Positions 29,201 to 61,300 of a stretch of 64,000 nt of DNA are shown here, in pieces. The position numbers and the translations under genes are program-made. This DNA is from Octopus bimaculoides (lineage: Eukaryota). Position 1 is the stretch's first letter; the number at the start of each line of letters is the position of its first letter. Where the stretch lies: assembly GCF_001194135.2 (NCBI RefSeq), contig NC_069004.1, positions 2,289,058 through 2,353,057 on the forward strand, given 5' to 3'. The notes below the pieces were generated by a model. The model worked only from the letters and a program-made list of their open reading frames with translations. It had not been told where the DNA came from and searched no databases.

Positions 29201-32200
29201 ATCATCATTATCATTTGATGTCTGTTGTCCATGGTGGCATGGGTTGGATGGTTTGACCAGGGCTGGTAAGCTGGAAGGCTGTGCCAGGATCCAGTCTGAT
29301 TTGGCATGGTTTTCTATGGTTGGATGCCTTTCCTAACAATAACTACTCTGAGAGTGTAATGGGTGCCATTTGCGTGACACCAGTATCTGCCATGATTGAT
29401 ATTGTTCTGCTTGATGGGTTTTCTTCTCAAGCATAACATAATGCCAAAGGTCTCGGTCATTGCCTCTGTGAGGCCCGACTCTCGAAAGGAACTCAGCCAA
29501 AAGGTTAATAAAAGGTGCAAGTTTGTGATTTTAATAATGTGTGTGTATTATGTGGATTTTTACATTTCTGTGTTTTATTAATTTCTGTGGATTTTTAGAA
29601 GGACATGATGGTATTTTAAATACCATAGTGATTGAAAATTTAACATTCTTCAAAGCATATGTTATTTGTGTACCATATTATTTCCATTAGTCATCAAGAG
29701 AAAACGGAACATGTGAGGTTCGTTTGATAGATCCAGACGGTCAAGAATTGGGAGAACTTCTCTGTGATAAAAACTACACTTACCAAAAATATAGTCTCAC
29801 TTTCTTAGAAGAACAAAGCGAAAAGATTGCACATATGTTGGAGGTTTGTTTCAAAAGCTTTTTCTCATCATCATCATCATCATTTTAACGTTTGCTTTTC
29901 CATGTTTGCATGAGTTGGAGGGAATTTGTTGAGGCAGTTTTCTATGACTGGACGACTTTCCTGTTGCCAACCCTCACCTGTTTCCAAGTGAGGTAACATT
30001 ACCCTGTAACTGGAGACCAGGTATCTTTCCATAAAACTTTGGAAACGCCAACACCTGTTTACAACTATCATCTTATGTCAAGGCGTAGTGCAAGTAACAT
30101 ATATGCATGTGTGTGTATACATGTTCTTTTATTCTTTTGTTTGTTTCAGTCATTTGACTGTGGCCATGCTGGAGCACTGCCTTTAGTGGAACAAATCGAC
30201 CCTAAGACTTATTCTTTGTAAGCCTAGTACTTATTCTATCGGTCTCTTTTGTTGAAACACTAAGTTATGCAGATGAATTTAGTACACAGAGATAAAAGTA
30301 CACTGTTGCCAATATTTTTTTCCTGTTTTTCAGACATGCAATCCATACAAGAACATGAAGTCCACTTTGAACAAGTCTATTCCTGTTTTAGTGACACATG
30401 TCGAACTACCAAATGTGGTAAGTATTCCTTGACATTAGATGTCCAAATCTATTTTCTCTCATCATCATCATCATCATTTAACATCCACTTTCTATGCTGG
30501 CATAGGTTAGACAGTTTGACATGGACAGATGAATTAGAGGCTCCATCAAATTCTATTTCTGCTTTGGTGTGTTTTCTAAAGCTGGATGCCCTTCTTAACA
30601 CCAATCACTCAACATGTGTCGTGGGTTTAAGAATAGGTATTTGTGTATGAGTGTGTATCTGTGTTCAAGTCCATTTGCCTTGAGATCACACCCTAATTGT
30701 GAACATATTACACATGTACTGTCATTTGTTTGCAGTCTTTCATCAAATGGCAATGGGGGTCCACCAGAATAAAACTCCAATCTAAGGGGTCCACTGATAA
30801 GAAATAGTTGAGAACCCCTACTTTAGATGTATGTGTTGGTATGTATAGCAAGAAACAGCTAGGTTTCTTTCTCTACCATTTTACAGAGTTCATAATAAGT
30901 TAATGTGTGAAAAACAAAATAGGGATTTTGGAAGAAGTGTCTGTAAAACTAGTTTTTAAACATTGAATGGCTATAGGGGTCCACCAGAATAAAATAGTAG
31001 AATCAAAGGGATCTACAGATGAAAAATGGTTGAGAACCTCTGCTTTAGACAAACAAATTGACTTCCAGTACTTTTGTAAGTCTGATATGTACTCTATGGG
31101 TCTCTTTTGCCAAACTGCTGAACTACTGGGATGTAAACAAACTAGCACCAGTTGTCAAGCAAAAAGAGAGAACAAACACAAAGACATACACACGTATTAT
31201 GTATGATGAGCTTCCACACAGTTTCCATCTTCAAAGATCACTTACAGGGTGTTATTTTAGTCCTAGGCTATAGCAGAAGACACTTGCCCAAATAGCCACA
31301 TTGTGGTTGTAAAGTAAGCTCGTTAACCACACAGCCATTATTTAGTTATTCATTTTTTTTTTATATTTCTATTTTCTGTGTCAGATATATTTCCAAAATT
31401 CCCAAAGGTCCAGCAGTGATGAGGAAAGTCATCGGATAAACTCGCAGCTTCTCCAGCTTGAAGAGATGTCAGTTGAACTCAACGAATATGCGGTTTCTGC
31501 TCCTCCGATTAAAAAGACAGTTGTTGGTGAGTTAACAGCTTCTTTGCTAATTCACTAGGTTTTTGGTAAATCACCATCATCATCATCATTTAAAATTTGC
31601 TTGGTTTCTGCGGCTGGATGCCCTTCCTAATGCCAACCACTCTGAGAGTATAGAGGGTGATTTTTACGTGCCACCGGCACAAGGGCCAGTCAGGCTTACT
31701 GGCATTGACCATGCTTGACTAGTGCTTTTTACGTGTTACCAGCACAGGAACCAGTCAAGTGGCACATATATATATATATATTCTTTTATTCTTTTACTTG
31801 TTTCAGTCATTTGACTGTGGCCTTGCTGGAGCACCACCTTTAGTTTCAGCACATGACCTCAGATCAAGACACTTGCTATGCAAGTACATCTCCAGAACAT
31901 ATTCTGTTGCAGGTAAAGCATGTTGCTGTCAGTTTACAGTGGATGACTGTTGGTACCGAAGTGTTATTGCTGATGTTAAACAGACCGATATGTTGGTTCT
32001 CTATGTTGACTATGGGACGTCGGAATATATTGATAGGTCAAGGTAAGAAACTTTTCAAAACATTCTCTTTTATTGGGAGTGGGAAGCAGAAGGCAGATTT
32101 TCTATGGCTTGATACCCTTTCTGTTGCCAAGCTTCACCTGTTTTCAAATAAGGTAATATTTTCTCCATGGATGGGTATGTTTTCAAGAAGATTGGTAATA

Positions 32201-35427: not shown

Positions 35428-35450
35428 GCATATATATATANNNNNNNNNN

Positions 35451-35563: not shown

Positions 35564-37571
35564 AGAAAGTTATCTGTGAAATTCTTGATTTCTCTATATT
35601 CTAATAAAACAATTCCTGCAAGCCTTTGTGAATAAAAGAAAAAAAAAACTTTTGGAAGGAAAAATAATTTGTTGACTTTATTTGTTGTCATCATCATCTT
35701 ATTGTTGTTGATGTTTATGTTGGCATCATTGTTGCCTCCACTTCGCCATCTTTACAAAGATCAGATGGAATTTATCAAGGTAGGTTTTCTGTGGCCAGAA
35801 GCCCGTCCTGCTGCCAGTCCTCACCTGTTTCCATCATCGTTTAACGTCCGCTTTCCATGCTGGCATGGGTTGGACGATTTGACTGAGGACTGGTGAAACC
35901 GGATGGCTACACCAGGCTCCAATCTGATCTGGCAGAGTTTCTACATCTGGATGCCCTTCCTAACGCCAACCACTCCGAGAGTGTAGTGAGTGCTTTTTAT
36001 GTGCCACCGGCACACACACACACATCGCTTGACAACCGATGCTGGTATGTTTACATCCTCATAACTTAGTGGTTCGGCAAAAGAAACCAATAGAATAAGT
36101 ACTAAAAGGGGGTGCTCCAGCATGGCCGCAGTCAAATGACTGAAACAAAGTAAAAGAGTATATACACATGACAGGTTCCTTTTAGTTTCCGTCTGCCAAA
36201 TCCACTCACAAGGTCTTTGTTGGCCCCTGGGCTACAGTAGAAGACAGTTGCTAAGGTGCCATGCAGTGGGAGTGAACTTGGAACCATCTGGTTGGGAAGC
36301 TAACTTCTTACCATAGTCATGTCTGCACCTAGCCACACACAGATACGCACACACATAGAATGTCATTCTCCATGAATGGACTATCGCATGTTGTCACAAG
36401 GTTAACCCTCTCAGATGTCACTGATGCTTACATACATATATGTGTAAAAATATATAGTGAATAAAAATGACCAAAAGGAATCGAAATCGTTTGGGATATA
36501 TACCAAAAAATCAAAATACAAAAAGTTCCCAAGAAATGGGGACGTTTATCCGTGGAAAGAAAAACCTACGAAAAGACCACGGTAAACTCGGGCAATAATG
36601 TTATATTTTAACAAATTTATTTACAAAAAATGTTGTTTAAGAGGTACCCTTGTTTGCAAAGGGCCCCAAGCCACGCGCATTCACACAACCAATCTTGACC
36701 ATGATCCTATTGAGTTGTGTGCTTTAAAAACACAAACGAAACGAACAGAGAGTTACTGTTCGAAAGTTCAGTTTCCTTCTCTGGTTTGCCACCAAGGAGG
36801 CTACTGTACAGTTTTTTACATAAATATTTTTGACATCCCCCTACCGCATTGGGGTAGAGGGATTTTAGTGTGTGTTACAATGTCGGTGAAATATGGTAAA
36901 TTTTGATGTGTTCTGGCAGTGTTTGTATGGGTGGTTGCTCGTTTATGATTTACTAGAAATATATTTATATAATACACACACACACGTGTGTGTAGGAATA
37001 TATGTGAAATATATATATATATATATATATATAGATAGATATAGATAGATATAGATATAGATATAGATGTATACATTTGAGAAATTTGAAAAGAAAATAC
37101 GAAACTGGTTATTTCTTCTAAAACAATGTCAGTACACACAAAATTTTATAAAATTTTTCAAACATGACGATTTAAATATATTCTTTAACCTTATAATACA
37201 AGTCTTCTGTAGTTTTTTTTTTTTCATTCTATTTTCTCTTTAATACATTTATATATATATATACACATATATATACTTAGTGCGTGTGTGTGTGTACAAA
37301 ATAAGTATAGGTGACAAATCTATGGAAGTTGTCAATTCTTATGGGAGACATTACAAGTCTAGAGTAAACATCAATGATAAACAAATCAAAGATGTAATAT
37401 CACATGGTATCGATTTTTCTTATTTTCAATCACTGGAGAATTCGACAACTCTCATTAACATCCCTTAATTTGTTTGTCCACAAATTAATCAGTATGTAGT
37501 TTCAGAAGTTATTTATTTTTTTAAATTTAGGGATATTTTCTTTGCTGTTTCTTATTTTGGTCTTTTGTTAT

Positions 37572-42376: not shown

Positions 42377-45300
42377 ATGAGCTGTTGTGATGTCCATTAT
42401 GCTTTTAAAAGAATAAAATGTAATAATATAAATAATAGTAACAATAATGATGACGATGATGATGATGACGATGATAATAATAATAATGGTAAAAATGACA
42501 ACAGCAGCAGCAGTACTAACAAGATCTGGACCCTGAAACCCCATGGCTGGACACTGGTGGTTTCTCTCGTTCTGCTTTTAATGGCACAGCTAGGATCAGC
42601 AGGAACTTGTGACAATCATCATAAACGATTTTCTCCGTACCCTTGCAGGCAAATTGTAAGTAGATGAGTAAACAATTAGCTGTATATGCATGAGTGTATA
42701 TAAATGTGTGGGAGTGTATATAAACATGTGTGTGTCTATGTATGTGTGTGTACACGTGTATGTGTTTGTGTGTGTGTATATATACACACTGTGTTGAGTT
42801 TATATAGGAATGTTCTATAAATAATACACTTAATATATACAAACACACACACACAAATACATATGTACATACACATACACACGCATACCAAAACAATCCG
42901 AAACCGGTCCCTGTTTAAGAATGCTTTTTTAGGTGATTTTAAATGTCTTGCCCGCTCACGTTTTTGGTATGCTGCTATATTTCATGTTGAGAACAATTTA
43001 GGTCTTAATAGACACAAGATGTGATCTATTTCTAGCGCATTAATTGTCCACGTTAGTGGTCGACGTTATTTTTTTAAAATGTACCTTAATCCCCTGAGAT
43101 TGCAGATAATATTTCTGAATCTCTTTGATTCTTTAGATGTGCTGGCCTCCTGATAATTAATCGATATTAATTAATATATGAATAATTACCAGATTTTATN
43201 NNNNNNNNNNNNNNNNNNNNNNNNNNNNNNNNNNNNNNNNNNNNNNNNNNNNNNNNNNNNNNNNNNNNNNNNNNNNNNNNNNNNNNNNNNNNNNNNNNNN
43301 NNNNNNNNNNNNNNNNNNNNNNNNNNNNNNNNNNNNNNNNNNNNNNNNNNNNNNNNNNNNNNNNNNNNNNNNNNNNNNNNNNNNNNNNNNNNNNNNNNNN
43401 NNNNNNNNNNNNNNNNNNNNNNNNNNNNNNNNNNNNNNNNNNNNNNNNNNNNNNNNNNNNNNNNNNNNNNNNNNNNNNNNNNNNNNNNNNNNNNNNNNNN
43501 NNNNNNNNNNNNNNNNNNNNNNNNNNNNNNNNNNNNNNNNNNNNNNNNNNNNNNNNNNNNNNNNNNNNNNNNNNNNNNNNNNNNNNNNNNNNNNNNNNNN
43601 NNNNNNNNNNNNNNNNNNNNNNNNNNNNNNNNNNNNNNNNNNNNNNNNNNNNNNNNNNNNNNNNNNNNNNNNNNNNNNNNNNNNNNNNNNNNNNNNNNNN
43701 NNNNNNNNNNNNNNNNNNNNNNNNNNNNNNNATATATATATATATATATACACGTATGTGTGTATATGTTTTTGTGTACCTAATCGTTTAGATCACCTGT
43801 GTTTGTCCCCTCCCCCGTTGACCAATGCTGGTGTGTTTACGTCTCCGTATCATCGATCAGTTCAGAATAATCAAGCTGAGTGCTAAGTTCGTGTTCAATA
43901 GATTTCATAGCCAATCCACAAAGACTGGTTCACGTTCGTGGTACAATGTAGTATTTTTACAAGAACTTTTTCAGGTGCAACGTATTATCGTTTTATTTCT
44001 TGAAATTCTCCGTTAACATAGATAGTTTATTTCTCTTTCAGCATCTTAACCAAAGTAAATAGATGACTCATCTACGTACTTGGATCTTAACATAGGGCCC
44101 CCTCAACCATGGAGGCCCCGTACAACCACAGGGGTTGCAGGGGTAGCAATGGCCCAGCTTTCACTTTATGTGCATTTGCACTGTCTGTTTTAACATTAAC
44201 GAAAACATCTTCCTGTTTTGTTTTTTTTTACTTTCGTTCATACACACTTTCCTTTATCACGCGCACACACACACAAAACAGCAAATTTGTTCATTGTTTT
44301 CTTCTTTTCCATTTTTCACAGAAACGCACCAAAGAAGACCTGACATTCGACTGCACCGTTTGCATCAGACCTTGTATGTTGATTCTTTTTCATTATTCAA
44401 TACAACTTTGCTTCTCTCTTTCTCTTCCACTCTCTGTATATATATATATATATATATATNNNNNNNNNNNNNNNNNNNNNNNNNNNNNNNNNNNNNNNNN
44501 NNNNNNNNNNNNNNNNNNNNNNNNNNNNNNNNNNNNNNNNNNNNNNNNNNNNNNNNNNNNNNNNNNNNNNNNNNNNNNNNNNNNNNNNNNNNNNNNNNNN
44601 NNNNNNNNNNNNNNNNNNNNNNNNNNNNNNNNNNNNNNNNNNNNNNNNNNNNNNNNNNNNNNNNNNNNNNNNNNCTTTTACTTGTTTCAGTCATTTGACT
44701 GCGGCCATGCTGGAGCACCGCCTTTAGTCGAGCAAATCGACCCCAGGACTTATTCTTTGTAAGCCTAGTACTTATTCTATCAGTCTCTTTTGCCCAACCT
44801 CTAAGTTACAGAGGCGTAAACACACCAGCATCGGTTATCAAGCGATGTTGGGGGAACAAACACACACACACACACACACACACGTATATATACATATATA
44901 CGACGGGCTTCTTTCAGTTTCTGTCTACAAATCCACGATAGAATGGGCACCAGGCAAATGGCTGAAACAAGTAAAAGAATAAAAGAATGTATGTGTGTGT
45001 GCATGCGTGTGTGCATATGCATGTATGCATATATACATTTACAAATATACATATCTACACTTCTCTCTCAACTTTACATTCCAGACTGTAACAATTCTAA
45101 AAAACAGAAGAAACTCCAAGAATTTCCAGAATCCAACCTTAAACTCGAAGGCATCAATATTTATGATTATGAATTTAATCCTGAAATCTATGACAGTGAC
45201 TTAATTCCAACTCTCAACTTAACCATTTCTCTGCCAAAAGGAGGTCTGTATATTCTTTCTTCACTTGTTCTTTTGTATTCTTTTATTCTTTTACTTGTTT

Positions 45301-46434
45301 TGGCCAATTGCCTGTAGCCATGCTGGAGCTCTGCCTTTTAGTCTAACAAATCGACCCCCAGGACTTATTCTTGGTAATCTAGTACTAATTCTATCGGTCT
45401 CTTTTGCCGAACCACTATGTGCACTAATATACGTAATATTAGTCTTACTTTTCCATTGTCCATCCATGACTTACAATCTACCCTGAAGATTTATATCAGA
45501 GGAACTGGAAGCAAGAGTTGATGCCAGAGATGCCATGGCAGTGGCGGCATTATCATAAATAACATTTATTTATATACTTCCAGATATATTCATATTCACT
45601 CGACATTTTGGCACAGGGCCAGCAATCTTGGGGGAAGTGGGCAAGTTGATTGCAGTAACCCCCCTCCAACTCAAATGGCACTTATTATATTGACCCCCCC
45701 CCAAAAAAAAGACGACAAACAACGTTGACCTCAGTGAAATATGAATGTTGAATTTAATGACAGACAAAATGCCACTGTGCATTTTGTTGAGCATGTTAAC
45801 CCTTTAGTGTTTAAACCGGCCATATCGGGCCCAATATATTCTACATGTTTTTATATTCAAACTGGTGATATCTAGCCTCTCACACCTGACCTACATTGAC
45901 ATTCTGAAAATAAACAATCACATCATTGAAACCTCAAAGCTATAAGATAATGCATGATTAATTCAAAACAATTTGAGTGAAAAAGTATTACATTTAACAG
46001 AGTAATCTGAACACTAAAGGGTTAATCATTCTGCAAGCCTGTGGCCTTGTCACTTCACTAAAATATTGGTATTTACCCTTACAGAAGCATTACTGCATAC
46101 GAACGGTGTCCGTCTCGATATATGGAGCTTTGCCAATGGTTCACATTACAATTATCCAGGAATTTGCCGTTATTTACGATTTTCAAATGTTCAATTTAAG
46201 CCTGACAGTAAGCTGGTATGTTTCTTTCATTAAATTGTAGTGCCTTTTTTTTGTTTGTTTGTTATTATTGTTTTGTTTTGTTTTCTGGTGACCAATTATG
46301 GTTGTCACAACTCCTCAATAGAACCCCAATCTCCTAATACCACGAAGACTGCCTTGGTGCAATAGGTGAGCTCTTGGGAGAGGCTCTATCCCTTAGAGAA
46401 ACAGGGCAAAAGATATGCAGTGATATATATACAT

Positions 46435-46477
<43 letters not shown>

Positions 46478-49400
46478 NNNNNNNNNNNNNNNNNNNNNNN
46501 NNNNNNNNNNNNNNNNNNNNNNNNNNNNNNNNNNNNNNNNNNNNNNNNNNNNNNNNNNNNNNNNNNNNNNNNNNNNNNNNNNNNNNNNNNNNNNNNNNNN
46601 NNNNNNNNNNNNNNNNNNNNNNNNNNNNNNNNNNNNNNNNNNNNNNNNNNNNNNNNNNNNNNNNNNNNNNNNNNNNNNNNNNNNNNNNNNNNNNNNNNNN
46701 NNNNNNNNNNNNNNNNNNNNNNNNNNNNNNNNNNNNNNNNNNNNNNNNNNNNNNNNNNNNNNNNNNNNNNNNNNNNNNNNNNNNNNNNNNNNNNNNNNNN
46801 NNNNNNNNNNNNNNNNNNNNNNNNNNNNNNNNNNNNNNNNNNNNNNNNNNNNNNNNNNNNNNNNNNNNNNNNNNNNNNNNNNNNNNNNNNNNNNNNNNNN
46901 NNNNNNNNNNNNNNNNNNNNNNNNNNNNNNNNNNNNNNNNNNNNNNNNNNNNNNNNNNNNNNNNNNNNNNNNNNNNNNNNNNNNNNNNNNNNNNNNNNNN
47001 NNNNNNNNNNNNNNNNNNNNNNNNNNNNNNNNNNNNNNNNNNNNNNNNNNNNNNNNNNNNNNNNNNNNNNNNNNNNNNNNNNNNNNNNNNNNNNNNNNNN
47101 NNNNNNNNNNNNNNNNNNNNNNNNNNNNNNNNNNNNNNNNNNNNNNNNNNNNNNNNNNNNNNNNNNNNNNNNNNNNNNNNNNNNNNNNNNNNNNNNNNNN
47201 NNNNNNNCAATGAGGGCAAGAACTATGTGAACTGTGAGGGGCAGTTGACAGTGTTGATCCACCATATTAGTTAGTGTGATGTGTGTTGGTTTATCATTGT
47301 ACTGACATTCGAGCAGGATGGAGTGTGTTCTGTGTGAACATAATAATTCTGCGATAGGTTATCACAGATAACCGCATTCAAATATTTATTTGGATAATAC
47401 TATTTTACACCTGACGTTAAGTTCTTTAATGAGTCCAAATTGGTAAGCTTGAACTGTTTCAGAAATTCTTTTGAAGTTGGACTGATTCCAAGTATTGCAT
47501 GGATTGTTCCCAAAGGAAATATGGCAGCAGTAGCCAGGATTGTCTTTTCATCTGTGTGGAAGTAAGAACAGAGAGCTTTAATAAATGGTTTATGCATATC
47601 TTTGCATGTTTTTTTTTAATTTTATTTTATTTTTCATTTTCTTCGTCAGTTTTGGTTTTTAGGTGGTTTTTAAAATCTCTGTGCTGTGTAAAGTCAGATA
47701 AACCAAATAAAATTAAGATTTATTTTTACAAGAAACAGCATCAAGTCAAAAAAGATTTAGCTCTAAAAAAAAAAACAATGTAAGTTGTGATTTGTCTATC
47801 AATAATTTGTTTGTTTTTTCGTGCAGGCATTGCTGAATCACAATTGCTTCTGGATATCGAAGAATAAAGTAAATATAACATACTTCATAAAAATATCTCT
47901 CTACCCAAGCACTCAGGAAATTGTCTATGATGCAAAGATTATAGGTAAGCCAGATGAGGTTTCAAATCCTTTTGTATTCATACTAGCTATATGAACTGTT
48001 TTGTTTTTAACCCTTTAACATTTAAATCAGCCATATCGGGTCCAAATATTCTTACCTGGTTTATGTTCAAACTGGCCTGATCTGGCCTCTCACACCTACC
48101 CTACAATGTCATTCTAAATATAAACAATCACACCATCGAAATTGCAAAGCTATGAGATAATCCATGATTAATTCAAAACAATGTGAATGCACACACACAC
48201 ACACACACATAATATACAACTCTCTGTTCTTACTTCCACACAGATGAAAAGACAATCCTGGCTACTGCTGCCATATTTCCTTTGGGAACAATCCATGCAA
48301 TACTTGGAATCAGTCCAACTTCAAAAGAATTTCTGAAACAGTTCAAGCTTACCAATTTGGACTCATTAAAGAACTTAACCATATACACAGTATGTCGTTT
48401 TAATTCACTTTATTTGAATAAATCTTTTTATCATTTATCTCTGACTTGCTGAAACCACATGACTAAATTATATCAGCTCCCGACTTACCACTAAATCCAT
48501 ATTTTAAATGTAAGTGCTAAAAGCTTTCCCTGACTCACACACACACACTCACAGGCTACGCTCTTACTACTTGTCAGCTCTCATTAGTTAAAAAATATTT
48601 TTGTATAAAAATTGTCATCTGATATTTTCCCTTTTACCAGCTTTCATACTATAAATTAGATAACACACTCACTAGATTGGTGACCTCTATAAACGGACAC
48701 CACACCACAACCTTATCCACCTGAGCCAGATATAATGTCGTTCAGCACTGAAAGAAATCACAAATTGCTGTTTGGATATGTTCCTTCTACAGATATTCCC
48801 TCTCCATGATGCTTTTTTTTTTGTGTGTGTGTGTATGGATTATGCATGGATTATTTAACAGTATGGATTATAAATTTCTTTATCTTTCTCTTTGTAGACA
48901 CAGAACTCAGTCTTATTCAGTAATCTTGATTCTGGAAAATATCAAATAACTGTAAGTTATCAATCAATCAATCTCTCTCTCTCTCTCTCTTCGGTTCTAC
49001 CATCATCTAACCAGTCTGTAGAGGCTCCAAATGTAAAAGCATGATGGTTTACATATATGGTAAATGATATAAACTTGCGTTTGTCGTAATTTCTTATATA
49101 TAGATGTAGGCATGGCTGTGTGGTAAGAAGCTTGGTTTCCAACCACGTGGTTCCGGGTTCAGTCCCACTGTGTGGCATCTTGATCAAGTATCTTCTACTA
49201 TAACCTCAAGGCGGCCAAAGCCTTGTGAGTAGATATGATAGACGGAAACTGGAAGAAGTCCATCCTATATTTGTGTGTGTGTGTGTGCATGTGCCTTTGT
49301 GTTTGTGAGTCTTTGTGTCATCTCTGTGTTTGTCCCCTACCACCACATGGCAACCTGTGTATGTATTTAATTGTATAATTCATCAATATAAACGTGTTCT

Positions 49401-50704
49401 TTTCAGATCCATTCGAGTCAGATTAATTCCAAAGATGGTCTTCTTTCTGCTATTATTTACATCAAAAGACCCCCTGAAAGTGAGTATGCATTTCATTTCC
49501 TTTCATAGCTTTTCCATTCAATCATATATTTTGTGACTGCTGCCGTTTTTTGCCGCCCTTCCTTTTTATCACCTTTTGGCCAATCTAAAGATTACAATCA
49601 CTGTTAAACAACTTATGTCAGCAAGCTGATAACTAAAATCTTCATGGCATTGTTTATTTTTTCCACTGTGCTCGAAGAACCAAACCAATTTCCCTTGATG
49701 CTTTGCAGACTCACCAACAGTAACAGCAATGCTGTATCAACTCCTTTGCAGGAGTAACAAAATTGCAGGAGTAAAACTCCTTAGAAGGAAAACATGCGTA
49801 CCTGAGTGAGGCAGAAAAACTCCTCAATAGAGGGGATAGGAAGACCAAGCTTGCTATCCCTTCAGATTTGATGGAGAAGACAGCCAGAAGGACCATCGTA
49901 TAATTTCCAGATGTCCTTGGCCTGGTAGTGCTACTGGAGGGTGCTACCGATTCAAGATAAACTCTACAGGGACAGATGTGCTTCTTCAAAGTGTGTGTAG
50001 AGTGACGAAACCATCCTGCATGTCCCCGTTCAGTGTCCGGGCATTACTGACTTGTGGGGTTATGTTGAACAGCTGCTGTCACATGTGAGACGAATCCATC
50101 TGCCAGTTGAGTCTGTAGTGACGATTGCACAGCCATCCTTCTTCAGTTGAGTAGGTAAGGCAGTTTTCCTTTTCCTGGTGGCTGTGGTGAAAGAGGTTGT
50201 TTGGTGGACAAGGCTGAAAGGCGTGAGGAGAGATACATTCCTCTTCAGTAGAACTCGCATTGACTTCTTCAAGTGTCACTCGAAAAGGAAACTGAGAGTG
50301 GAGAGTGAAGTGCTGTCCTTGAGTGAGTTTATTGAAAGGTGAATGAAGGTTGCGAAAATGGCAAGAGTGGATGGTACCTCTCTAAGTGTAGACCTGTGAG
50401 TCAGAGAGAAGGAATTGGAGAGGGCACTTGCTCCTGGGGTTTCAGGGAAATCTCGGACAGTAGGTTTCCTCGATTATCCCTAGAGGCCTTCCTGTATCAG
50501 GAGAGCCACATCTCTGTCATCCTTTCCGCCACTTTTTTTTTAAACCTTTGCATGCTATGAATGTCCCTTCTTTTCCAGTGTATACCCTATATACTTGCTT
50601 TCTTTCTTTCTTTCTTTTTATCATTTCATTATATGTAAACCCCCACATTTCATGTCTGTCTTTGTAGTGTCCCCCTCATCCCTCACCCTTGTGGCAAATA
50701 AATG

Positions 50705-50735
<31 letters not shown>

Positions 50736-51288
50736 TATTATTATTATTATTAATTTAATCTACAGAATTCCCTTCTCTAATTATCCTGCTGTCACTGCTG
50801 CTACTGATAACAATTACATTGCTTGTAATCTGTCTTCTCTCAAGAAAACATATTAAATCCATGCTTGTAGGTAAGTGGTTTATAGTTTTATATCTTAAAT
50901 CCATTTTCAGGGAGAGTAATCACCATGGCCCATGGTAATAATGTGACCACTGACTGGCTGGAGAGAACTGTTCTGTGTCCGTAGAAGGTTAGCTGTGATA
51001 TGTCATGCATGAGTGTCCACAATCGTTTCTTGCTTGAAGTGGTCAGTCTGAATGCTCAGGGTGGCCTGATCTTAGCGATCTGTGTTCTGCAGGTGTCCAA
51101 GGCAGCTTATGAAATCGAACCAAATTCGATGACTGGCACCCGTGCCAGTGGAGCTCTAACATCATCCGAGCGTGATCATTGGATATGACCTTATTTTGTT
51201 CATTTTAAAACAAAACTGTCCGACAAACAGGAGCATGAAACTCTGAGTAACAGTTTTGTGATATTTTTGCTGCTTTTTAATAAAGTAT

Positions 51289-51323
<35 letters not shown>

Positions 51324-51532
51324 TTTGCCTGGTCATTTTTGGTGGTCGTCTCACATCCTCTCCTCTCATTCAGAACCCCTACAACAAAATATAATGATTA
51401 GGTATGGAAATGATTCCAACTAGGCCAATGTTTCATCTGTAAAAAATGCAACGTGAAACATCCACTTATTAAGTTGGCAATTAGTAGAAATTTACAACAG
51501 TTTACAAAAGTGGCCAAAGACTTTTGCACAGT

Positions 51533-51580
<48 letters not shown>

Positions 51581-53922
51581 CATGCAAAGGTGTATGCATA
51601 TTTGTATTCTGGGTATAGAAATGTACTGAAATGATTGTTATTGTACAAAACAAACAATACGACTTTTGCTGTCATAAATCAAATTCATAGTTAACTTCTT
51701 TATTAGAAAATGCTAGTCCTGACGTACAAGATTACTGTTGTGGAACACAATTATTATAAGTAGGTTAGTGACAAAATAAAGAGAAATATTCAGCTAAAAC
51801 CTGTAACACCTTGTGTAAAAAAATTGTGTCAGGCAAATGAATAATTAGCTTACCTTTTGTTGAAAGCCCACTTCCGTTTAAATGAAAGCTGAGTATATCG
51901 AACAGATATGACTAAGTGGTAAGACATTTAATGGCTTAGAGTTAGATTCACCCTCTTCGATACCCTGCAATTTCTGAACCAGGGGCCCTTTACTGGATGC
52001 AGTTTAACCCTTTAGCATTCAGATTATTCTATCAAATGAAATGACCGCAGTAGTTCTCTAACTGAACTGGTTGATCCTGGCCATTGACAGCTTGTATCTG
52101 TTCATCCACTCAGCATTCAGTGAAATTTGTCATTGATTCCAATAAGTCTGTTTGTTGAAATAGTTCACATCCACTATATTGGAATCCCATGATTTCAACA
52201 TATCCTAAATATATATATATATATATTTGTATATACTTGTGAGAGTGTGTGTGTGTGTCTGTGTTTCCTTGTCTTGATATCGTGTGATTGTTGTAAATGA
52301 ATGTTATTATTACCAATCTTCTACAAAAACTTGTCTGCTCATGGGGGAAATATTACCTTTTTTGTATCTACATCATACTTCTTCCTCACTTTTTCGAATT
52401 TCCATTCATTCTTAAGTTCTCCATTTCTTTTCTTGACAAGTATTGACACTAATTGTTCAAGGAGTTTATATCTTCAGAAATTCTCCATTTTTACCACAGT
52501 TGTTTACTACCTCTTCTATCTGCCATTGCTCTGTTCTCAGTACTTCTCAATCCCATCCTTTCCACCACACTCCTACTAGTAGCCTTGATCAGATTGTTTG
52601 TGTGATGTTCTTTGTTTCAATGTGTCTCAATACATTATTGACTTTATTCATCTCTTGATTTAGTCTCCATTGGTTAACCTTCTTAAAGTCACACACAAAT
52701 TTTGTCCCTTCTGTATTTAATAGATCCAAAATTCTTTCTATTATTAATTGATCTTCATTATTTGAGTAGTCACAGATTGCAATTCATGATATTATATTCC
52801 TGCAAACAATTGTCCATTTCCTCCACTGTACCACTTTCACTTCTCACATGTCCAACATCACCCGACATCCTTCTTTTAATAGCTTCTTGCTCCAATTTTG
52901 TTAACCATCCATTCTTTTGTATTGTTCTTGTTTGGTCACATAATCTCTGTTCAGTAATTTCGAACGGTTCCATTGCCTTCCATTCAGTGTGCTTTCATTT
53001 ATTGTACCCTCTGACAGGCATGCCATTGACATCCACTGGCAGTAACACTCCATAACCATCATGTTTACTCCACCTATGCCTTATTATTATTATTATTTAT
53101 TTTTATAACATGCTTTCACTTCACTACCGAGCGCAGCTCTGTTTGCCTTGGTATGTGCTGTGGTTTGCTGTGATGCTCTTATGGTTACTGTATTGAGTGT
53201 TTTGCGTAGGATGTGTGCAGTGCCCAGTAGTGCAATTTTCTGTATGTTATATATATTTGTAAGTCCTGGTGTTTTTGTTATGTATTTGTCTGAATATTTA
53301 TTATTATTATTTTTTTTTTCCAGGTCAAAAGACATCAGGCACTGTACTCTTAGTGACTTTTCACGAAGATTCCCATGATGAACAACTTACCCACATATTG
53401 AAAAATGTTTTTGAAAAGAACTTCAAATGGATTGTAGACACGGTTGATGCAAAAGAACACTCCCGTCTGAACAACTATCCCACTTTCCAAGAGCAAGCTA
53501 TTTTCTTTATCATGCCATCTCATTGGAAATGCGATGCAGATTCAAGAGAAATGACAGCGATATTTGTTTTCAATAGTTTATCTACGAATTCTTCTCTGCC
53601 AGCAGCTGTTATCTACCAACAGGCTAAGACAGATATACCGAAATGCTTACATAAACTACCAAAATTTCATATCATAGAAGACATTATGAAAATATTTAAG
53701 CATGTGTATAAAACATATGATGTACATAGCAAGTGTTTATCTCTTGTCAAACTCATTTTTTCGCCTGTTCATCAAGACCAAATTTATAAATGTTCCACTT
53801 GGAAAAAACTGAAAGAATCCATTGAAGGATTGTCAGACTCTGAATGTTTTTGTGAAGACAAAGCCACACAGGGGTCGACGTTATTGGCTCCCCACACATT
53901 TCAGGCCTTGTTCCTAGAGTAG
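42377..53922 (+). CDS. Interleukin-17-receptor-like / SEFIR-domain type I transmembrane protein, about 498 aa, 8 exons
   Basis: Exons 42377-42655, 46085-46207 (alternative donor at 46216), 47827-47944, 48244-48389, 48898-48951, 49407-49479, 50766-50870, 53324-53922; total 1497 nt, in frame. Hydrophobic signal-like stretch WTLVVSLVLLLMAQLGSAG; beta-rich ectodomain with an FnIII-like motif VLFSNLDSGKYQIT; TM FPSLIILLSLLLLITITLLVICLLS followed by RKH. The last exon aligns by eye to the SEFIR pattern (VLLVTFHEDSH..., AIFFIMPS, AIFVFNSL, AAVIYQ, IPKCLHKLPKFHIIEDIMKIFKHV). Family assignment is by motif recognition, not by HMM. Confidence 0.72.
45800..46021. mobile_element. Second piggyBac-like MITE family (about 220 bp)
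   Basis: TTAA-CCCTTTAGTG...CACTAAAGGG-TTAA; other copies at about 4805-4925, 5550-6263 (interrupted by SINEs) and 48010-48190 (truncated). Confidence 0.75.
47416..48379. repeat. Perfect 160-bp inverted repeat: 47416-47575 is the reverse complement of 48220-48379, spacer 644 bp
   Basis: Base-by-base comparison shows no mismatch. The ORF track shows the same peptide DEKTILATAAIFPLGTIHAILGISPTSKEFLKQFKLTNLDSLKNLT on - at 47400-47597 as in the + exon at 48244-48389. Confidence 0.95.
49700..50710 (+). mobile_element. Decayed L1/Tx1-clade LINE 3' portion
   Basis: ETILHVPVQCP (CCHC remnant), AVVKEVVWWTRLKG...FFKCHSKRKLRVE...FIER*; ends in AATAAATGAAA followed by an (ATC)n tail near 50697-50735. 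Confidence 0.55.
52690..53300 (-). mobile_element. Two R4/Dong-like non-LTR retrotransposon fragments
   Basis: 52770-52973 encodes EITEQRLCDQTRTIQKNGWLTKLE (N-terminal conserved block); about 53140-53290 encodes IQKIALLGTAHILRKTL (C-terminus of the RLE); (TAA)n on both sides of the latter. Confidence 0.65.
53324..53922 (+). other. SEFIR/TIR-like cytoplasmic domain exon (about 199 aa)
   Basis: Long open frame after a strong polypyrimidine acceptor (ttttttttttccAG at 53323); alternating beta/alpha pattern typical of SEFIR/TIR folds. Confidence 0.7.
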
Positions 53923-56449: not shown

Positions 56450-57424
56450 TTAAAATTTGTACCCCAACATATAGACCATCCATGAAGGAATTTTCAAAAA
56501 ACCCGGGATCCATTCAGCTTTACTTCTGGAAATCTTGAAGAAGTGAGTGGCAAGAAACCTCAGTGAGCGCAGGGACCACGGCTTCTTGCCATCAATATCA
56601 ACAAGACTATATTCGTCTGCCAGATCACCTGTCGGTAATATACGCCCGGTTTTCTTCATCAGGTTCGCTTTGTCACTCAAAATTTTAACAATACATTTTC
56701 CACTGAATTCGGTGCTCTCTCCGTTCAGAAACCCTTCTCTGATGTGCTCATACCCCTTTGGTAGATCAGATGGGTCAGATGAGGAGTAAAGGTCCTTTAT
56801 AGTTTCAGTCTGAACAAAGCCTGGCCACAAACTGAAGCAAGCCACGCCGTGTTTTTTAAGTTCGTGAGCTAAATCAACTGCCATTCTGTCGCAAGCTTCT
56901 TTGCCGACACCATAAGCGACATTGAATGTATAGACCAGGCCACCACCCGAAGACACAATGACGATGAGCCCAGATTTGCGAGGAACCATCATTTTAGCAG
57001 CATATACTGAACAGATATAATGGTTACGTAACCCAACGTTATTAATGTCGTCCCAGATACTGATCGGTTGTTCCCAAAATGGTTTGGCAGTCACATCGAT
57101 TAAAGAATTAACAGCTGAATACGCATTGTTTACCAACAGATCCAGCTGTCCGTTTTGTTCGGACTTTATCTTGTCGAACAGTCGTTCAATTTCATCATCT
57201 TTGGTGTGGTCAACCTGTACTGCAACGCCGCGTCCACCCCGTCCGTTTATCTCTTCGACCGTTTCCTCCAGTGACCCAAGGCTTTTTTCAGTTTTGCGTA
57301 ATGTTCGTCCAGTCACATAAACAGTAGCACCAGCTTCACCCAGCTGGACAGCAATACCTTTTCCAATTCCTCTCGTAGCTCCAGTTACAAGACAAACAAG
57401 TCCAGACAAAGGTTTGGCCATCAT
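56450..57424 (-). CDS. DHRS1: Dehydrogenase/reductase SDR family member 1, single coding exon, 324 aa
   Basis: Uninterrupted ORF from ATG 57424 (MMAKPLSGLVCLVTGATRGIGKGIA...) with SDR motifs TGxxxGxG, NNAY and YGVGK (YxxxK). Segments such as GATVYVTGRT, KPFWEQP..IWDDINNVGLRNHYICSVYAA and GESTEFSGKCIV are characteristic of DHRS1. The ORF track start at 57475 is a non-ATG extension. Confidence 0.95.
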   Translation of the reverse strand: MMAKPLSGLVCLVTGATRGIGKGIAVQLGEAGATVYVTGRTLRKTEKSLGSLEETVEEINGRGGRGVAVQVDHTKDDEIERLFDKIKSEQNGQLDLLVNNAYSAVNSLIDVTAKPFWEQPISIWDDINNVGLRNHYICSVYAAKMMVPRKSGLIVIVSSGGGLVYTFNVAYGVGKEACDRMAVDLAHELKKHGVACFSLWPGFVQTETIKDLYSSSDPSDLPKGYEHIREGFLNGESTEFSGKCIVKILSDKANLMKKTGRILPTGDLADEYSLVDIDGKKPWSLRSLRFLATHFFKISRSKAEWIPGFLKIPSWMVYMLGYKF

Positions 57425-58314: not shown

Positions 58315-61300
58315 ATGAATTCGGCCAGCGTGTCCAGGTGCCGCTTTTTACTACATTTTGCAAACGAACATTTAGATTTCCGTCTACCAGTATGTAATGA
58401 CATCATTTTGTTTCTTCTTAGTCTTCTATATAACGTCTGTATCTCTAATAGTGACTTGAGTTACTTTTGGGGTTGACTTCGTGATTGAAAATGAAACCGG
58501 CAAAAATAGAGAACGGTAACCACTTGGTTTCCTTGGTTTACCGAAACGAATAAATAAATGTGTTTGTATGATGGGGGAGGGCATAGGTTTGGTTGTATGG
58601 ATATGGAATTCGCTTTATAAACATGTGGTTTCGAGTTCTATCACACTCAGTCGCGCCTTGGGCGAGTGTCTTCTTTAGCCTTGGGCCGATCAATTCCTTG
58701 TGAGTAGAATTGGTAGACAGAAACTGCTTGGAAGCCCGTTATATGTGTATATATGAATGTGTGCATACTTGTCTCTCTAAATATTGACATTTCCTGTCAG
58801 CAAATCAGCTTTTTTGCGCTACAGCTTCGAAAACAAGTATAATGATAATAATAATAGTTTCAAATTTTGTCACAAGGGCAGCAGTTAGATATATATANNN
58901 NNNNNNNNNNNNNNNNNNNNNNNNNNNNNNNNNNNATAGATAGATAGATAGATGAAACTTTTTTTAGAGTGACATATTTTCTCTAAGCGATTTATAAATA
59001 TTTTTTTTATTGGTTGTTTTCTTTTTGTTGATTTTTCAAGCTAAAAGTAAAATGCTTTGCCAAAACTTGTCTTGTTCTTGATGTTTTTATATAGGAACTG
59101 CACTCAGTTGCAGAAATTCTGGGAATACCACTAAAGATCAAGGAATATGAAAGACAAACTAAGGTAAGGACTTTATTTAAAAAAAAAAAAAATTCAATTC
59201 AAGTCATCAGTTAATAATCAAGGGGAAATAACAAAGGCTAAAGTTGGTATCGAGACCTCAGGGGCCTACCATAGTTTTGATAAATATCACACCAAAGAAA
59301 AGAATAATAATTAATGAGTATAGTGATGAATTTAGTGTACAGCTAGGTGTTCATCAGGGTTTGGTTCTCAGTCCCCCCTCCTATTTATCATTGTACTCTT
59401 GGCTGTAACAAGAAATTCCAGCTGCCTCTGGTAACTGTTATGTACTGATGATCTTGCTCTTATGACAGATTCTTTTACAGAACTAGAAAAGGAATTCCAG
59501 ATGTAGAGGCAAAACTAGGAACCAAAGGGCCTTAAGGTTAACTTAACAAAGACTAAGGTTCTAGTGTGAAAGAAAATGGACAGGACCCTTCCCTCATCAG
59601 TCATAGAAACCATGCCAAATCAGACTGGAGCCTGGTGCAGCTCTCCAGCTTGCTGACTCTGGTCAAACCATCCAACCCATGCCAGCATAGAAAATGGACA
59701 TTAAATAATAATAATAATAATGATGATGATGAAGAAGAATGTTATACACACCCAGTAATATTTTGATTTAATGCTGATTCAAGTATGTCTACCAAAAGTA
59801 ATATTCTTTTCCTGAAATTTCTTTGTAGAGTCCATTTCTGATAGTCGAGGTACCATCTGAAGATAATGTGAAGCAGTTACTGAAGAGAACCATTTTGGTT
59901 AGGTAAGAGGCTCTTCGGTCATTTTGGTCGGGTGGTGTGTATGTTTGTTTATAACAGGAGGCAACAATAAGTGACCCACGAAGGTGTTCTCTGTAGACTC
60001 TGGGCCTTCTCTGAAAATTCTTTCATATTTAAATTTGTGGGCCATCGAGTAGTTGATGGCTTTCTGAGGGACGAAAGACAGGCAGGGTGAATGGATAGCT
60101 CCACACATGGTTGTGTGGTATGAAGCTTGCTTCCCAACTACATGGTTCCAAGTTCAGTCCCACTGCATGACACCTTGGGCAAGTGTATTTTACTATAGCC
60201 CCAGCCTTGTGAGTGGTTTTGATACATGGACACTGAAAGAAGCCTGTCATGTGTGTGTCTGTGTCTCTTCCCCGATTACTGGTTGAGAGATGGCACAGAG
60301 CAGTGCTTTCATTTCGGTCTGCTTTTTTCTTTTTTCTTTTAGGTCAGCATATGAACTGTGGGCCGAAGGGAAAACTCTAGAAAGCCTTAATGAACGCCTC
60401 GCCAAGCTAAGTCCAGAAATTACAGTACGTTCATATTATAACCATGTGCCCTTTTTTTTTTTTCATTTCTTTTTTCTCTCTTTATTGTTTGTTTTCTTTG
60501 TTCGCCCGGTGTGCTAACATTTCTGCCAGCTTGCCATCTTAAAGAAGTAATATTGAACCAGTGTGTGTGCGCGTGTTTATTAATGGTGTAATGATCCTTC
60601 CAAGACCCAATGATAATAATTATTGGTTTTATGCAGTTTATTTTGCAAAGAGATGATTATACAAAAAATAACATTGTATGTATGAATGCAGCTGTATATA
60701 ACATATTCTGATGTAAAATTTATTTTCTCCATATTAATGCTATATTGTCATCTTGATAAATACTGCATTTGTTTTTTGCAGGAACCATACACATCTGCAG
60801 ACTCTACATTTAAAATTGTGGTAGAAGCATTCAATAAGAAAATTCCTCCAAAAGAAAAGTTAGAGAAGATTGAAGTAAGTTAAATGGTCAAGATAATACC
60901 AGGTATTAACCCATTAACTGCCAAATTCTTTTATTCATATTTTTTGGCTTTGAATGGAAAAAAAAAACAAAACAAAAAAACAAACCTACAAAACAATAAA
61001 AGAGAAATTCATTTGGGATACTAAATAAGTCTAGAAATTATTATTGGGTAAATCAAGTAGAAATTTATCTGGGCTGTTGATAACCGTATCGGAGTGGCAG
61101 GCGTTAGGAATCGGGCATCCAGCTAGATCAAATTGGAGTTATTTCCATTTTTACTATTTAAATTTCATTTCAGAAATCTAATTTTTATTTTCATTATATT
61201 TACCTATTTATCCTCATATTTGTTCACATTAGTCCCTTCCTTGGACGGAATTAGGATTAAAAGGCAAAATACGACTGGAGAATCCTGACCACAGTTTCTA

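What the first reader, a model, noticed from the sequence alone, without database searches (positions are those of the whole stretch)
47416..48379. Perfect antisense copy of a coding exon and its 3' splice site inside the IL17R-like gene: a possible built-in pre-mRNA hairpin
Seen: 47416-47575 is a 100% identical reverse complement of 48220-48379. The duplicated unit is not a transposon; it is 24 nt of intron end (polypyrimidine tract plus AG) and 136 of the 146 nt of coding exon 4. The two arms bracket exon 3 (47827-47944). Inference: the pre-mRNA could fold into a 160-bp perfect duplex with a 644-nt loop. That would hide the exon-4 acceptor, loop out exon 3, and give an ideal ADAR substrate or hairpin endo-siRNA source. 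Established: coleoid cephalopods recode mRNAs heavily by A-to-I editing guided by dsRNA. Skipping exons 3 and 4 together (118+146=264 nt) keeps the frame and would shorten the ectodomain by 88 aa, while skipping either alone shifts the frame. Caveat: perfect identity about 200 bp from a contig end (gap ends at 47207) is also what a misassembly looks like.
Basis: partly seen in the sequence, partly recalled or inferred. Interest (0 to 1): 0.78.

Follow-up and report, generated by a model that had tools for sequence, protein, structure and literature searches.

The report
Unconserved inverted exon copy, possibly misassembled
A perfect 160-base backwards copy of part of an exon does sit in the upstream intron of an octopus membrane-protein gene, but two related octopus species lack it and it lies next to an assembly gap, so it is either an assembly error or a very recent private insertion, not an evolved RNA switch.

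Summary
Window 47416-47575 is the exact reverse complement of 48220-48379: 160 nt, no mismatches, a 644-nt loop holding a 118-nt exon. The right arm is 24 nt of intron end plus 136 of 146 nt of the next exon. RNA folding gives the full stem.

The interpretation as a built-in hairpin is not supported.
- The left arm is missing from the orthologous intron of Octopus vulgaris and O. sinensis (gap-free chromosome assemblies). Homology stops at the arm's outer edge and resumes 20 nt after its inner edge. The sisters have about 515 nt there, mostly one SINE.
- The arm carries all five substitutions specific to this window's exon and has zero divergence, so it is very young or not real.
- It lies 208 nt from a 730-N gap, and the same window holds a clear duplication artefact at another gap.

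Against an artefact: both junctions lie in contiguous sequence, and no shared k-mer explains a false join.

My estimate: misassembly about 0.5, real but very recent template-switch insertion about 0.4, evolved regulator below 0.1. No reads or RNA data for this species could be reached.

Other corrections:
- The "IL17R-like" label found no support in any search.
- The two exons are coding exons 5 and 6, not 3 and 4.
- The upstream donor is 46215, not 46207.

Interest is low.

The parts
47416..47575 (-). Left arm: antisense copy of 24 nt of intron 5 end plus the first 136 nt of coding exon 6, lying inside intron 4
   Evidence: Exact reverse complement of 48220-48379. Absent at the orthologous place in O. 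vulgaris and O. sinensis; it matches only their exon 6, in reverse, at 96.9%. It shares all 5 window-specific substitutions. On the + strand it creates a GGTAAG donor-like site at 47442.
47576..47595 (+). 20-nt spacer CTTTAATAAATGGTTTATGC between the left arm and the point where homology with the sister species resumes
   Evidence: Unique in the window and absent from both sister loci at up to 3 mismatches. Its similarity to the SINE tail is no better than that of random 20-mers.
47208..47415 (+). Unique intron-4 sequence between the assembly gap and the left arm
   Evidence: Collinear and 88-89% identical to O. vulgaris L001 15525-15728 and O. sinensis L002 11046-11251. Homology ends exactly at ...CCTGAC.
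46478..47207 (.). Assembly gap (730 N) in intron 4, 208 nt upstream of the left arm
   Evidence: The matching interval in O. vulgaris is about 967 nt.
47576..48219 (+). Loop of the predicted hairpin (644 nt): end of intron 4, coding exon 5, most of intron 5
   Evidence: It is orthologous and collinear with the sister species from 47596 onwards.
47827..47944 (+).
   Evidence: tblastn with O. sinensis XP_029650504.1 and the spliced model.
48220..48379 (+). Right arm: native 3' end of intron 5 (24 nt, polypyrimidine tract plus AG) and 136 nt of coding exon 6
   Evidence: Conserved in place in both sister species at 96.9%.
48244..48389 (+).
   Evidence: It holds 48 A in the paired exonic part, of which 34 would recode if read as G.
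42377..53922 (+). Host gene: 10 coding exons, 571 aa. It encodes a predicted single-pass membrane protein with a hydrophobic N-terminal segment, an ectodomain, one TM exon (50766-50870) and a 198-aa cytoplasmic tail. It is the ortholog of O. sinensis XP_029650504.1.
   Evidence: Ortholog-guided model with all GT-AG introns and an intact ORF, 450/571 identical residues. No family assignment was possible.

Best explanation
The left arm is most likely not part of the real genome. I think it is a local error of a gapped short-read assembly: a copy of this animal's own exon-6 region was written, inverted, into a 180-nt slot of intron 4 during contig joining or gap closing. In two congeners that slot holds an approximately 515-nt block made mostly of one SINE with internal tandem repeats and an (ATG)n tail. 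On this reading the gene has the ordinary structure seen in O. vulgaris and O. sinensis, no hairpin forms, and nothing is regulated. Shown: the repeat is exact; it is absent from both congeners; it replaces their SINE block to the nucleotide on the left and within 20 nt on the right; it is derived from the window's own allele; the assembly makes duplication errors elsewhere in this window. Inferred: that the window's species also carries a hard-to-assemble element at this site, and that the join was made wrongly.
For: (1) Zero mismatches in 160 nt, and all 5 substitutions that separate this window's exon 6 from the sister species are present in the copy. The copy was therefore taken from this very allele. 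(2) It lies 208 nt from a 730-N gap. The window has 8 gaps in 64 kb. (3) The only other long perfect repeat in the window is a 106-nt 100% direct duplication abutting a 10-N gap (8624-8729 / 8740-8845). That is an unmerged contig overlap, so this assembly does contain false duplications. (4) The arm is absent from the orthologous intron of two gap-free chromosome assemblies, O. vulgaris OX597837.1 and O. sinensis CM016882.1. (5) Homology to the sisters ends exactly at the arm's outer edge (CCTGAC|) and resumes at ATATCTTTGCATG, 20 nt after its inner edge. The sisters have 34 nt plus a full-length high-copy SINE plus an (ATG)n tail there. An independent real insertion landing on the same bonds as a SINE in another lineage would be a coincidence of roughly 1% or less (my estimate). 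An assembly failure at such an element needs no coincidence. (6) False exon gains within genes are a documented class of error in older assemblies (PMC9516828).
Against: (1) Both junctions lie in uninterrupted sequence with no N. Neither shows microhomology or a shared k-mer with the true flanks of exon 6. A k-mer walk could not have jumped there, so reads carrying both junctions should exist. (2) Two concordant inverted junctions plus a 20-nt filler is what an in-vivo template-switch insertion looks like. It is not what a single chimeric read looks like. (3) The gap is not between the two copies, which is the usual signature in PMC9516828. (4) None of the other 5-6 SINE copies in the sister loci is present at the orthologous place in the window. 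Two of those sites are clean, gap-free empty sites (53076-53099 and 51114-51180). The SINE at this site may therefore never have existed in this lineage, which would remove the reason for an assembly failure. (5) I could not reach reads, long reads or any second assembly of this species.
Confidence: 0.5

Rival explanations
1. The left arm is real but very young. It would be a lineage-specific, possibly polymorphic or heterozygous, inverted templated insertion made by replication template switching or error-prone break repair. A fork moving right to left stalls at the repeat-rich SINE or microsatellite in intron 4. The nascent strand switches to the lagging-strand template about 650 nt behind, copies about 160 nt (48220 to 48379), and switches back beyond the obstacle. 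That deletes the obstacle and leaves 20 nt of filler. It has no evolved function. If transcribed, the 160-bp duplex would act as a self-inflicted hypomorph: the exon-6 acceptor is occluded, exon 5 is looped out (skipping or a 118-nt circular RNA), exon 6 is hyper-edited and/or diced.
For: Two clean junctions in contiguous sequence, with orthologous, collinear, correctly oriented flanks on both sides. A 20-nt unique filler. The source lies within 1 kb and is inverted, as expected for intra-fork switching (established models of FoSTeS/MMBIR and quasi-palindrome formation, from my own knowledge). Zero divergence plus the 5 shared derived substitutions fit a recent event. The assembler handled at least 10 other SINE copies and two empty sites in this window without trouble. 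The gene is otherwise intact, as expected if the event is too recent, or heterozygous, to have led to decay.
Against: No microhomology at the X|arm junction. The insertion replaces the sister species' block to the nucleotide, which needs either an ancestral SINE deleted almost exactly or an unlikely site coincidence. It is close to a gap in an assembly with proven duplication errors. No independent data exist for the species.
Confidence: 0.4
2. The hairpin is real, fixed and maintained by selection as a regulatory device of this gene. It would be an exon-complementary sequence that tunes exon 5/6 inclusion, drives ADAR recoding of exon 6, makes a circular RNA, or makes auto-siRNAs.
For: The duplex is thermodynamically dominant in silico. 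The arms flank an exon at 251 and 275 nt, a geometry that supports back-splicing with repeats as short as 30-40 nt (PMC4201285). Skipping exons 5+6 keeps the frame. Coleoids edit heavily (PMC5705066).
Against: It is absent from both congeners, and there is no weaker precursor complement in their introns. Functional editing structures in cephalopods and flies are marked by sequence conservation around the sites (PMC5705066). A perfect 160-bp duplex is expected to give unselective hyper-editing, not site-selective recoding (established ADAR biochemistry, my own knowledge): 34 of the 48 paired exonic A would recode. Perfect identity gives no sign of the mismatches and bulges that tuned substrates carry. 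The 95% upper bound on age is roughly 20-30% of the time since the split from the sister lineage (my calculation).
Confidence: 0.06

Closest known systems
False exon gain / false duplication in draft assemblies (Ko et al. 2022, PMC9516828)
   Same: A near-identical second copy of an exon within the same gene, in a gapped older-technology assembly, absent from better assemblies of relatives. The same window shows a classical gap-flank duplication.
   Different: Here the copy is inverted and partial (it cuts through the exon). It is 208 nt away from the gap, not separated from its twin by a gap. It is joined to unique sequence on both sides without N. Read depth and k-mer multiplicity, the defining diagnostics, could not be tested.
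Inverted repeats flanking an exon that promote back-splicing to circular RNA (ZKSCAN1/HIPK3 Alu pairs, mouse Sry; Liang and Wilusz 2014, PMC4201285)
   Same: Reverse-complementary sequences on both sides of an exon, close to its splice sites (251 and 275 nt). At 160 nt they are far longer than the 30-40 nt shown to be sufficient.
   Different: The repeats are not transposons. The downstream arm is the next exon and its acceptor, so pairing would also disable linear splicing. The loop exon is only 118 nt. No back-splice evidence exists. PMC4201285 also notes that stronger hairpins do not always favour circularisation.
Editing-site complementary sequences (ECS) of ADAR substrates (GluA2 Q/R, Drosophila Syt1; reviewed in PMC5705066)
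   Same: An intronic sequence complementary to a coding exon that would form dsRNA across exonic adenosines.
   Different: A known ECS is imperfect, usually tens of nt long, and conserved between species. This one is perfect, 160 bp long, covers the splice acceptor, and is absent in congeners.
Drosophila hairpin-RNA (hpRNA) endo-siRNA loci derived from inverted duplication of a target gene (my own knowledge: Okamura 2008, Czech 2008, Wen 2015)
   Same: An inverted duplicate of genic sequence able to form a long perfect hairpin that Dicer could process into siRNAs against the parent gene.
   Different: hpRNA loci are separate transcription units with many-hundred-nt arms, and their small RNAs have been documented. 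Here one arm is the target exon itself, within the same pre-mRNA, and no small-RNA data exist.
Replicative template-switch / templated inverted insertions (FoSTeS-MMBIR, quasi-palindrome formation, polymerase-theta templated insertions; my own knowledge)
   Same: A short inverted copy of sequence from less than 1 kb away, inserted with a small filler and loss of the sequence originally at the site.
   Different: Such junctions usually show 2-5 nt of microhomology. None is seen at the outer junction. Polymerase-theta insertions are typically much shorter than 160 nt.

Membership tests
False duplication (assembly artefact) | Copies (nearly) identical in sequence | tested here: met
   160/160 identical.
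False duplication (assembly artefact) | Assembly gap between or abutting the duplicated copies (PMC9516828) | tested here: inconclusive
   A 730-N gap lies 208 nt upstream of the left arm. No gap lies between the arms or at either junction.
False duplication (assembly artefact) | Haploid or lower read depth over each copy, and discordant read pairs | not testable with these tools
   No reads for this species are available. Exact look-ups of window ORFs found nothing.
False duplication (assembly artefact) | Copy absent from an independent, better assembly | tested here: inconclusive
   Absent from the gap-free assemblies of two congeners. No second assembly of the same species could be reached.
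Inverted-repeat-driven circular RNA locus | Base-pairing repeats of at least 30-40 nt in both flanks of the circularised exon | tested here: met
   160-nt arms lie 251 nt upstream and 275 nt downstream of exon 5. The threshold is from PMC4201285. This holds only if the left arm is real.
Inverted-repeat-driven circular RNA locus | Back-splice junction observed in RNA | not testable with these tools
   No RNA-seq access.
ADAR substrate with an evolved ECS | Exon-intron duplex predicted | tested here: met
   The MFE and centroid structures both contain the complete stem.
ADAR substrate with an evolved ECS | Complementary sequence conserved among related species | tested here: not met
   No left arm, and no other exon-6 complement, in introns 4-5 of O. 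vulgaris or O. sinensis.
ADAR substrate with an evolved ECS | Clustered A-to-G differences between RNA and DNA | not testable with these tools
   No RNA data.
hpRNA / endo-siRNA hairpin | 21-22-nt small RNAs from both arms | not testable with these tools
   No small-RNA data.
IL-17 receptor family (host gene label) | Cytoplasmic SEFIR domain | tested here: not met
   No Pfam hit at E<=1 for the O. sinensis ortholog or the window's C-terminal 198 aa. No NCBIfam hit. No SEFIR or IL-17R chain in PDB by phmmer or profile search at E<=10. A profile search of 1.84 billion representatives found no homolog of the cytoplasmic part. The AlphaFold model has mean pLDDT 35 and is unusable. A fold too diverged for sequence methods is not excluded.
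IL-17 receptor family (host gene label) | IL17R-type fibronectin-III-like ectodomain | tested here: not met
   No Pfam or PDB match. The only remote ectodomain relative is an unannotated 189-aa protein (P0125, E=8e-7).
Replicative template-switch insertion | Inverted copy templated from nearby sequence, with two junctions and loss of the original sequence | tested here: met
   The source lies 644-964 nt away. The sister block is missing and a 20-nt filler is present.
Replicative template-switch insertion | Microhomology at the switch points | tested here: not met
   The outer junction reads ...CCTGAC|GTTAAG, against the native flank ...TATATG|GTTAAG, so no shared bases. The inner junction is not assessable because the ancestral sequence is unknown.

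The most novel reading that the evidence does not exclude
The inverted copy is real and fixed in this octopus species. By pairing with exon 6 and its acceptor in the pre-mRNA, it makes the gene self-regulating. The gene would produce a 118-nt exon-5 circular RNA and/or an in-frame isoform lacking exons 5 and 6. Exon 6 would be hyper-edited or diced in ADAR- or Dicer-rich tissues. That would be a newborn, exon-derived cis-regulatory hairpin caught at zero divergence.
Probability: 0.05. Interest if true: 0.6.

Novelty: not a real feature. Interest (0 to 1): 0.2.

Why it matters
If the arm is an artefact, the value is practical. It warns against reading biology such as editing guides, hairpin siRNA sources or exon duplications into perfect repeats near gaps in this assembly. 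It also marks a spot where the reference should be corrected. If the arm is real, it would be a rare snapshot of a brand-new inverted templated insertion inside a functional gene. It would then serve as a natural experiment on what a perfect 160-bp exon-intron duplex does to splicing, circular-RNA formation and editing in an animal with very high ADAR activity. Either way, the comparative data show it is not a conserved part of how this gene works.

Tried and rejected
1. Independent data for the same species. I ran exact look-ups of the 65-aa minus-strand ORF that spans both left-arm junctions, of the neighbouring intronless SDR protein and of the 217-aa last-exon ORF. All found nothing. The best protein match to the SDR is only 89%, so this species is not in the searchable collections. 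The similarity search would also have picked up any predicted ORF containing the exon-6 peptide, and found only O. vulgaris. A scan of metagenome contigs for a conserved 52-nt exon-6 string found nothing.

2. Origin of the 20-nt spacer. There is no other copy in the window or the sister loci at up to 3 mismatches. I tested whether it is a decayed SINE tail. Its alignment score is matched by 25-30% of random 20-mers, so I rejected that idea.

3. Dating the sister SINE at the site, to decide whether it is ancestral. Its divergence from a family consensus is 9.6%, against 5.8-8.4% for other sister copies. No sister copy, even one at 20% divergence, is shared with the window. The consensus clock is therefore not usable here, and this stays inconclusive.

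4. Haplotype-bubble and simple-inversion explanations. I rejected both, because the flanks of the left arm are not allelic to the flanks of exon 6, and because an inversion heterozygote would not produce the arm|spacer|loop junction.

5. Fold-back (palindromic read) artefact. I rejected it because the structure is not symmetrical. The loop is unique, single-copy and in the native orientation.

6. IL17R / SEFIR identity of the host gene. Pfam, NCBIfam, PDB phmmer and profile searches, and HMMER against 1.84 billion representatives were all negative. The AlphaFold2 model of the cytoplasmic domain had pLDDT 35, so I ran no fold search.

7. A transposon origin of the repeat. I rejected it because the arm matches only exon 6, and the SINE family in the region is unrelated to it.
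Full report
**1.

Reading the sequence, the repeat finder and a direct comparison all agree.
- 47416-47575 is the exact reverse complement of 48220-48379: 160 nt with no mismatch.
- The match decays at once at the inner ends (2 mismatches in the next 5 nt). There is none beyond the outer ends.
- The spacer is 644 nt.
- A self-megablast of the whole window finds no other long inverted repeat.
- Folding 47400-48400 as RNA gives an MFE of -407.8 kcal/mol. The complete 160-bp stem is present in both the MFE and the centroid structures.
- The 730-N gap ends at 47207, 208 nt before the left arm.

**2. The gene**

A protein search with the two exons found one cluster. It contains O. vulgaris CAI9739938, O. 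vulgaris CAI9739937 and O. sinensis XP_029650504.1. The O. sinensis protein is 581 aa and NCBI names it "metabotropic glutamate receptor-like protein N".

Guided by that protein, I built a complete model in the window. It has 10 coding exons, all introns are GT-AG, the ORF is intact at 571 aa, and 450 residues are identical to O. sinensis.

| Exon | Coordinates | Note |
|---|---|---|
| e1 | 42377-42655 | |
| e2 | 44322-44373 | |
| e3 | 45085-45243 | |
| e4 | 46085-46215 | |
| e7 | 48898-48951 | |
| e8 | 49407-49479 | |
| e9 | 50766-50870 | transmembrane |
| e10 | 53324-53922 | |

The donor of exon 4 is 46215|GTATGT. Using 46207 puts exon 5 out of frame.

The frame arithmetic is right. Skipping e5 alone gives a stop at codon 238. 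Skipping e6 alone gives a stop at codon 255. Skipping both stays in frame.

The label "IL17R-like" found no support.
- There is no Pfam or NCBIfam family.
- There is no PDB relative by sequence or by profile.
- A profile search of 1.84 billion representative proteins returned only the O. vulgaris fragment, one unannotated 189-aa ectodomain relative and a low-complexity hit.
- A structure model of the cytoplasmic domain was unusable, with pLDDT 35.

By eye, the strand-helix-strand start of the tail (TVLLVTFHEDSHDEQ...) is compatible with a SEFIR/TIR-like fold. That is a lead only, not a result.

**3. Comparison with two congeners is the key evidence**

I fetched the orthologous loci from two chromosome-scale assemblies. 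L001 is O. vulgaris OX597837.1 and L002 is O. sinensis CM016882.1. Neither locus contains any N.

- Intron 4 and intron 5 align collinearly with the window at about 88-93% identity.
- The 208 nt between the gap and the left arm are orthologous and in place: window 47220-47415 matches L001 15525-15728.
- Homology stops exactly at ...TTTTACACCTGAC (47415). It resumes at ATATCTTTGCATG (47596).
- Between those points the window has the 160-nt arm plus a unique 20-mer.
- Between those points the sisters have about 515 nt. This is 34 nt of other sequence, one full-length copy of a high-copy SINE whose first 31 nt are tandemly duplicated, and an (ATG)n tail.
- The left arm's only match in either sister is their exon 6, in reverse, at 96.9%.
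- Neither sister has any other sequence complementary to exon 6 in these introns.
- The five positions at which the window's exon 6 differs from both sisters are all carried by the left arm.

The copy was therefore made from this lineage's own, already diverged, exon.

With no difference in 160 nt, and about 5% per-lineage neutral divergence in the flanking intron, I calculated a 95% upper bound on its age. The bound is roughly a fifth to a third of the time since the split from the sister lineage, barring gene conversion.

This rules out a conserved, built-in regulatory structure for this gene in the genus.

**4. Artefact or young real insertion?**

Arguments for an artefact:
- The identity is perfect.
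- The arm is close to a gap, in an assembly with 8 gaps per 64 kb.
- The same window has a proven false duplication. The segments 8624-8729 and 8740-8845 are 106 nt long and 100% identical, and they abut a 10-N gap.
- The arm occupies, to the nucleotide, the slot where the sisters carry a SINE with internal tandem repeats and a microsatellite tail. Short-read assembly and gap closing commonly fail on such sequence.
- A real, independent insertion on the same bonds would be a coincidence of about 1% or less (my estimate).
- False exon gains in older assemblies are well documented (PMC9516828).

Arguments for a real event:
- Both junctions lie in continuous sequence.
- The junctions share no k-mer or microhomology with the native flanks of exon 6. 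An overlap- or k-mer-based step could not have produced them without reads that carry them.
- Two concordant inverted junctions, a filler and loss of the resident sequence form the classical footprint of replication template switching to a template less than 1 kb away.
- The gap is not between the copies.
- None of the sisters' other SINE copies is present in the window. Two of those sites are clean empty sites. The SINE may therefore be sister-specific, and then there would have been nothing to misassemble.

I could not break this tie. The species is absent from every collection I could query.

| Explanation | My estimate |
|---|---|
| Misassembly | about 0.5 |
| Real, very recent, unselected insertion | about 0.4 |
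| Evolved regulator | about 0.06 |

**5. What it would do if real (inference)**

The left arm is transcribed about 650 nt before the right arm, and intron 4 is still present at that point. The duplex would bury the polypyrimidine tract, the AG and 136 nt of exon 6. It would hold the two splice sites of exon 5 together, at 251 and 275 nt from the stem.

Expected outcomes:
- Loss of exon-6 recognition. That means frameshifting skips, or the in-frame e5+e6 skip.
- Back-splicing of exon 5. Inverted repeats of 30-40 nt are enough in reporter systems (PMC4201285).
- Unselective ADAR hyper-editing. There are 48 paired exonic A, of which 34 would recode.
- Possibly dicing.

All of these lower the output of normal mRNA, so the allele would behave as a hypomorph, not as a tuned switch.

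Functional editing structures in cephalopods and flies are recognised by conservation around the sites (PMC5705066). This one lacks that conservation.

**6. Verdict**

- The physical inference is sound but conditional on the arm being real.
- The functional reading is not supported by comparative data.
- The host-gene label is unsupported.
- The most likely status is "not a real feature", with a substantial chance of a private, newborn structural variant.
- Interest is low unless reads or PCR confirm the junctions.

Noticed in passing
window 8624-8845: A 106-nt segment is repeated with 100% identity, in direct orientation, on both sides of a 10-N gap (8624-8729 = 8740-8845). This is the signature of two overlapping contig ends that were not merged, so it is a false tandem duplication. 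The other 10-N gap (35441-35450) sits in TA/CA microsatellite sequence and has a 35-nt flank repeat.
   Followed up: partly
window 46200-46221: Two donor-like sites lie 8 nt apart at the end of coding exon 4: 46207|GTAAGC and 46215|GTATGT. Only 46215 keeps the frame and matches the O. sinensis protein (..KPDSKL|ALLNHN..).
   Followed up: yes
L001 10001-30130 and L002 5001-27884: Annotation of the ortholog is inconsistent. O. vulgaris splits it into two 'hypothetical' genes (CAI9739938, 271 aa, and CAI9739937, 217 aa). NCBI calls the O. sinensis model 'metabotropic glutamate receptor-like protein N', although it has no detectable domain. That name probably comes from the N/D-rich low-complexity N-terminus.
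   Followed up: partly
window (at least 10 copies, e.g. 35832-36014, 29201-29380, 59604-59738); L001 15763-16243, 22403-22564, 27166-27669: A high-copy SINE is present in all three species. It has tandem ~64-nt units containing GTGCCAGTGGCACGTAAAAAGCACC, a conserved 3' core ending GGACGTTAAA, and an (ATG/GAT)n tail. None of the 5-6 copies in the O. vulgaris locus is present at the orthologous site in the window. Empty sites lie at 53076-53099 and 51114-51180. This suggests activity after the species split.
   Followed up: partly
L001 17811-18153, 17432-17631, 16340-16535; L002 12512-13591: The sister species carry near-perfect palindromic, MITE-like elements in introns 4 and 5 of this gene that are absent from the window. 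One has 171-nt arms, 99% complementary, with a 1-nt spacer. Long intronic hairpins are therefore tolerated in this gene, but none of them involves exon sequence.
   Followed up: no
window 56450-57421 (-): An intronless short-chain dehydrogenase gene (DHRS1-like, 323 aa; Pfam adh_short at 5.7e-33) lies tail-to-tail with the membrane-protein gene, as in O. sinensis. The best database identity is only 88-89%, so the window's own species is not in the protein collection.
   Followed up: yes
window 13759-14154 and 24976-25300 (+): Two ORF fragments match the Pfam Tudor domain: PF00567 N-terminal part at 1.6e-4 and C-terminal part at 2.7e-8. They are probably exons of a Tudor-domain gene upstream of the gene studied. 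The second runs into the 873-N gap at 25305.
   Followed up: partly
window 47442-47447: Read on the gene's sense strand, the antisense exon copy creates a consensus 5' splice site (TTG|GTAAGC) inside intron 4. If the arm is real, this could act as a decoy or cryptic donor.
   Followed up: no
P0125 (189 aa): This is the only remote relative of the ectodomain found among 1.84 billion representatives (E=8e-7, covering profile positions 181-322, i.e. exons 4-7). It is unannotated. It hints at a small, fast-evolving lineage-restricted family.
   Followed up: no
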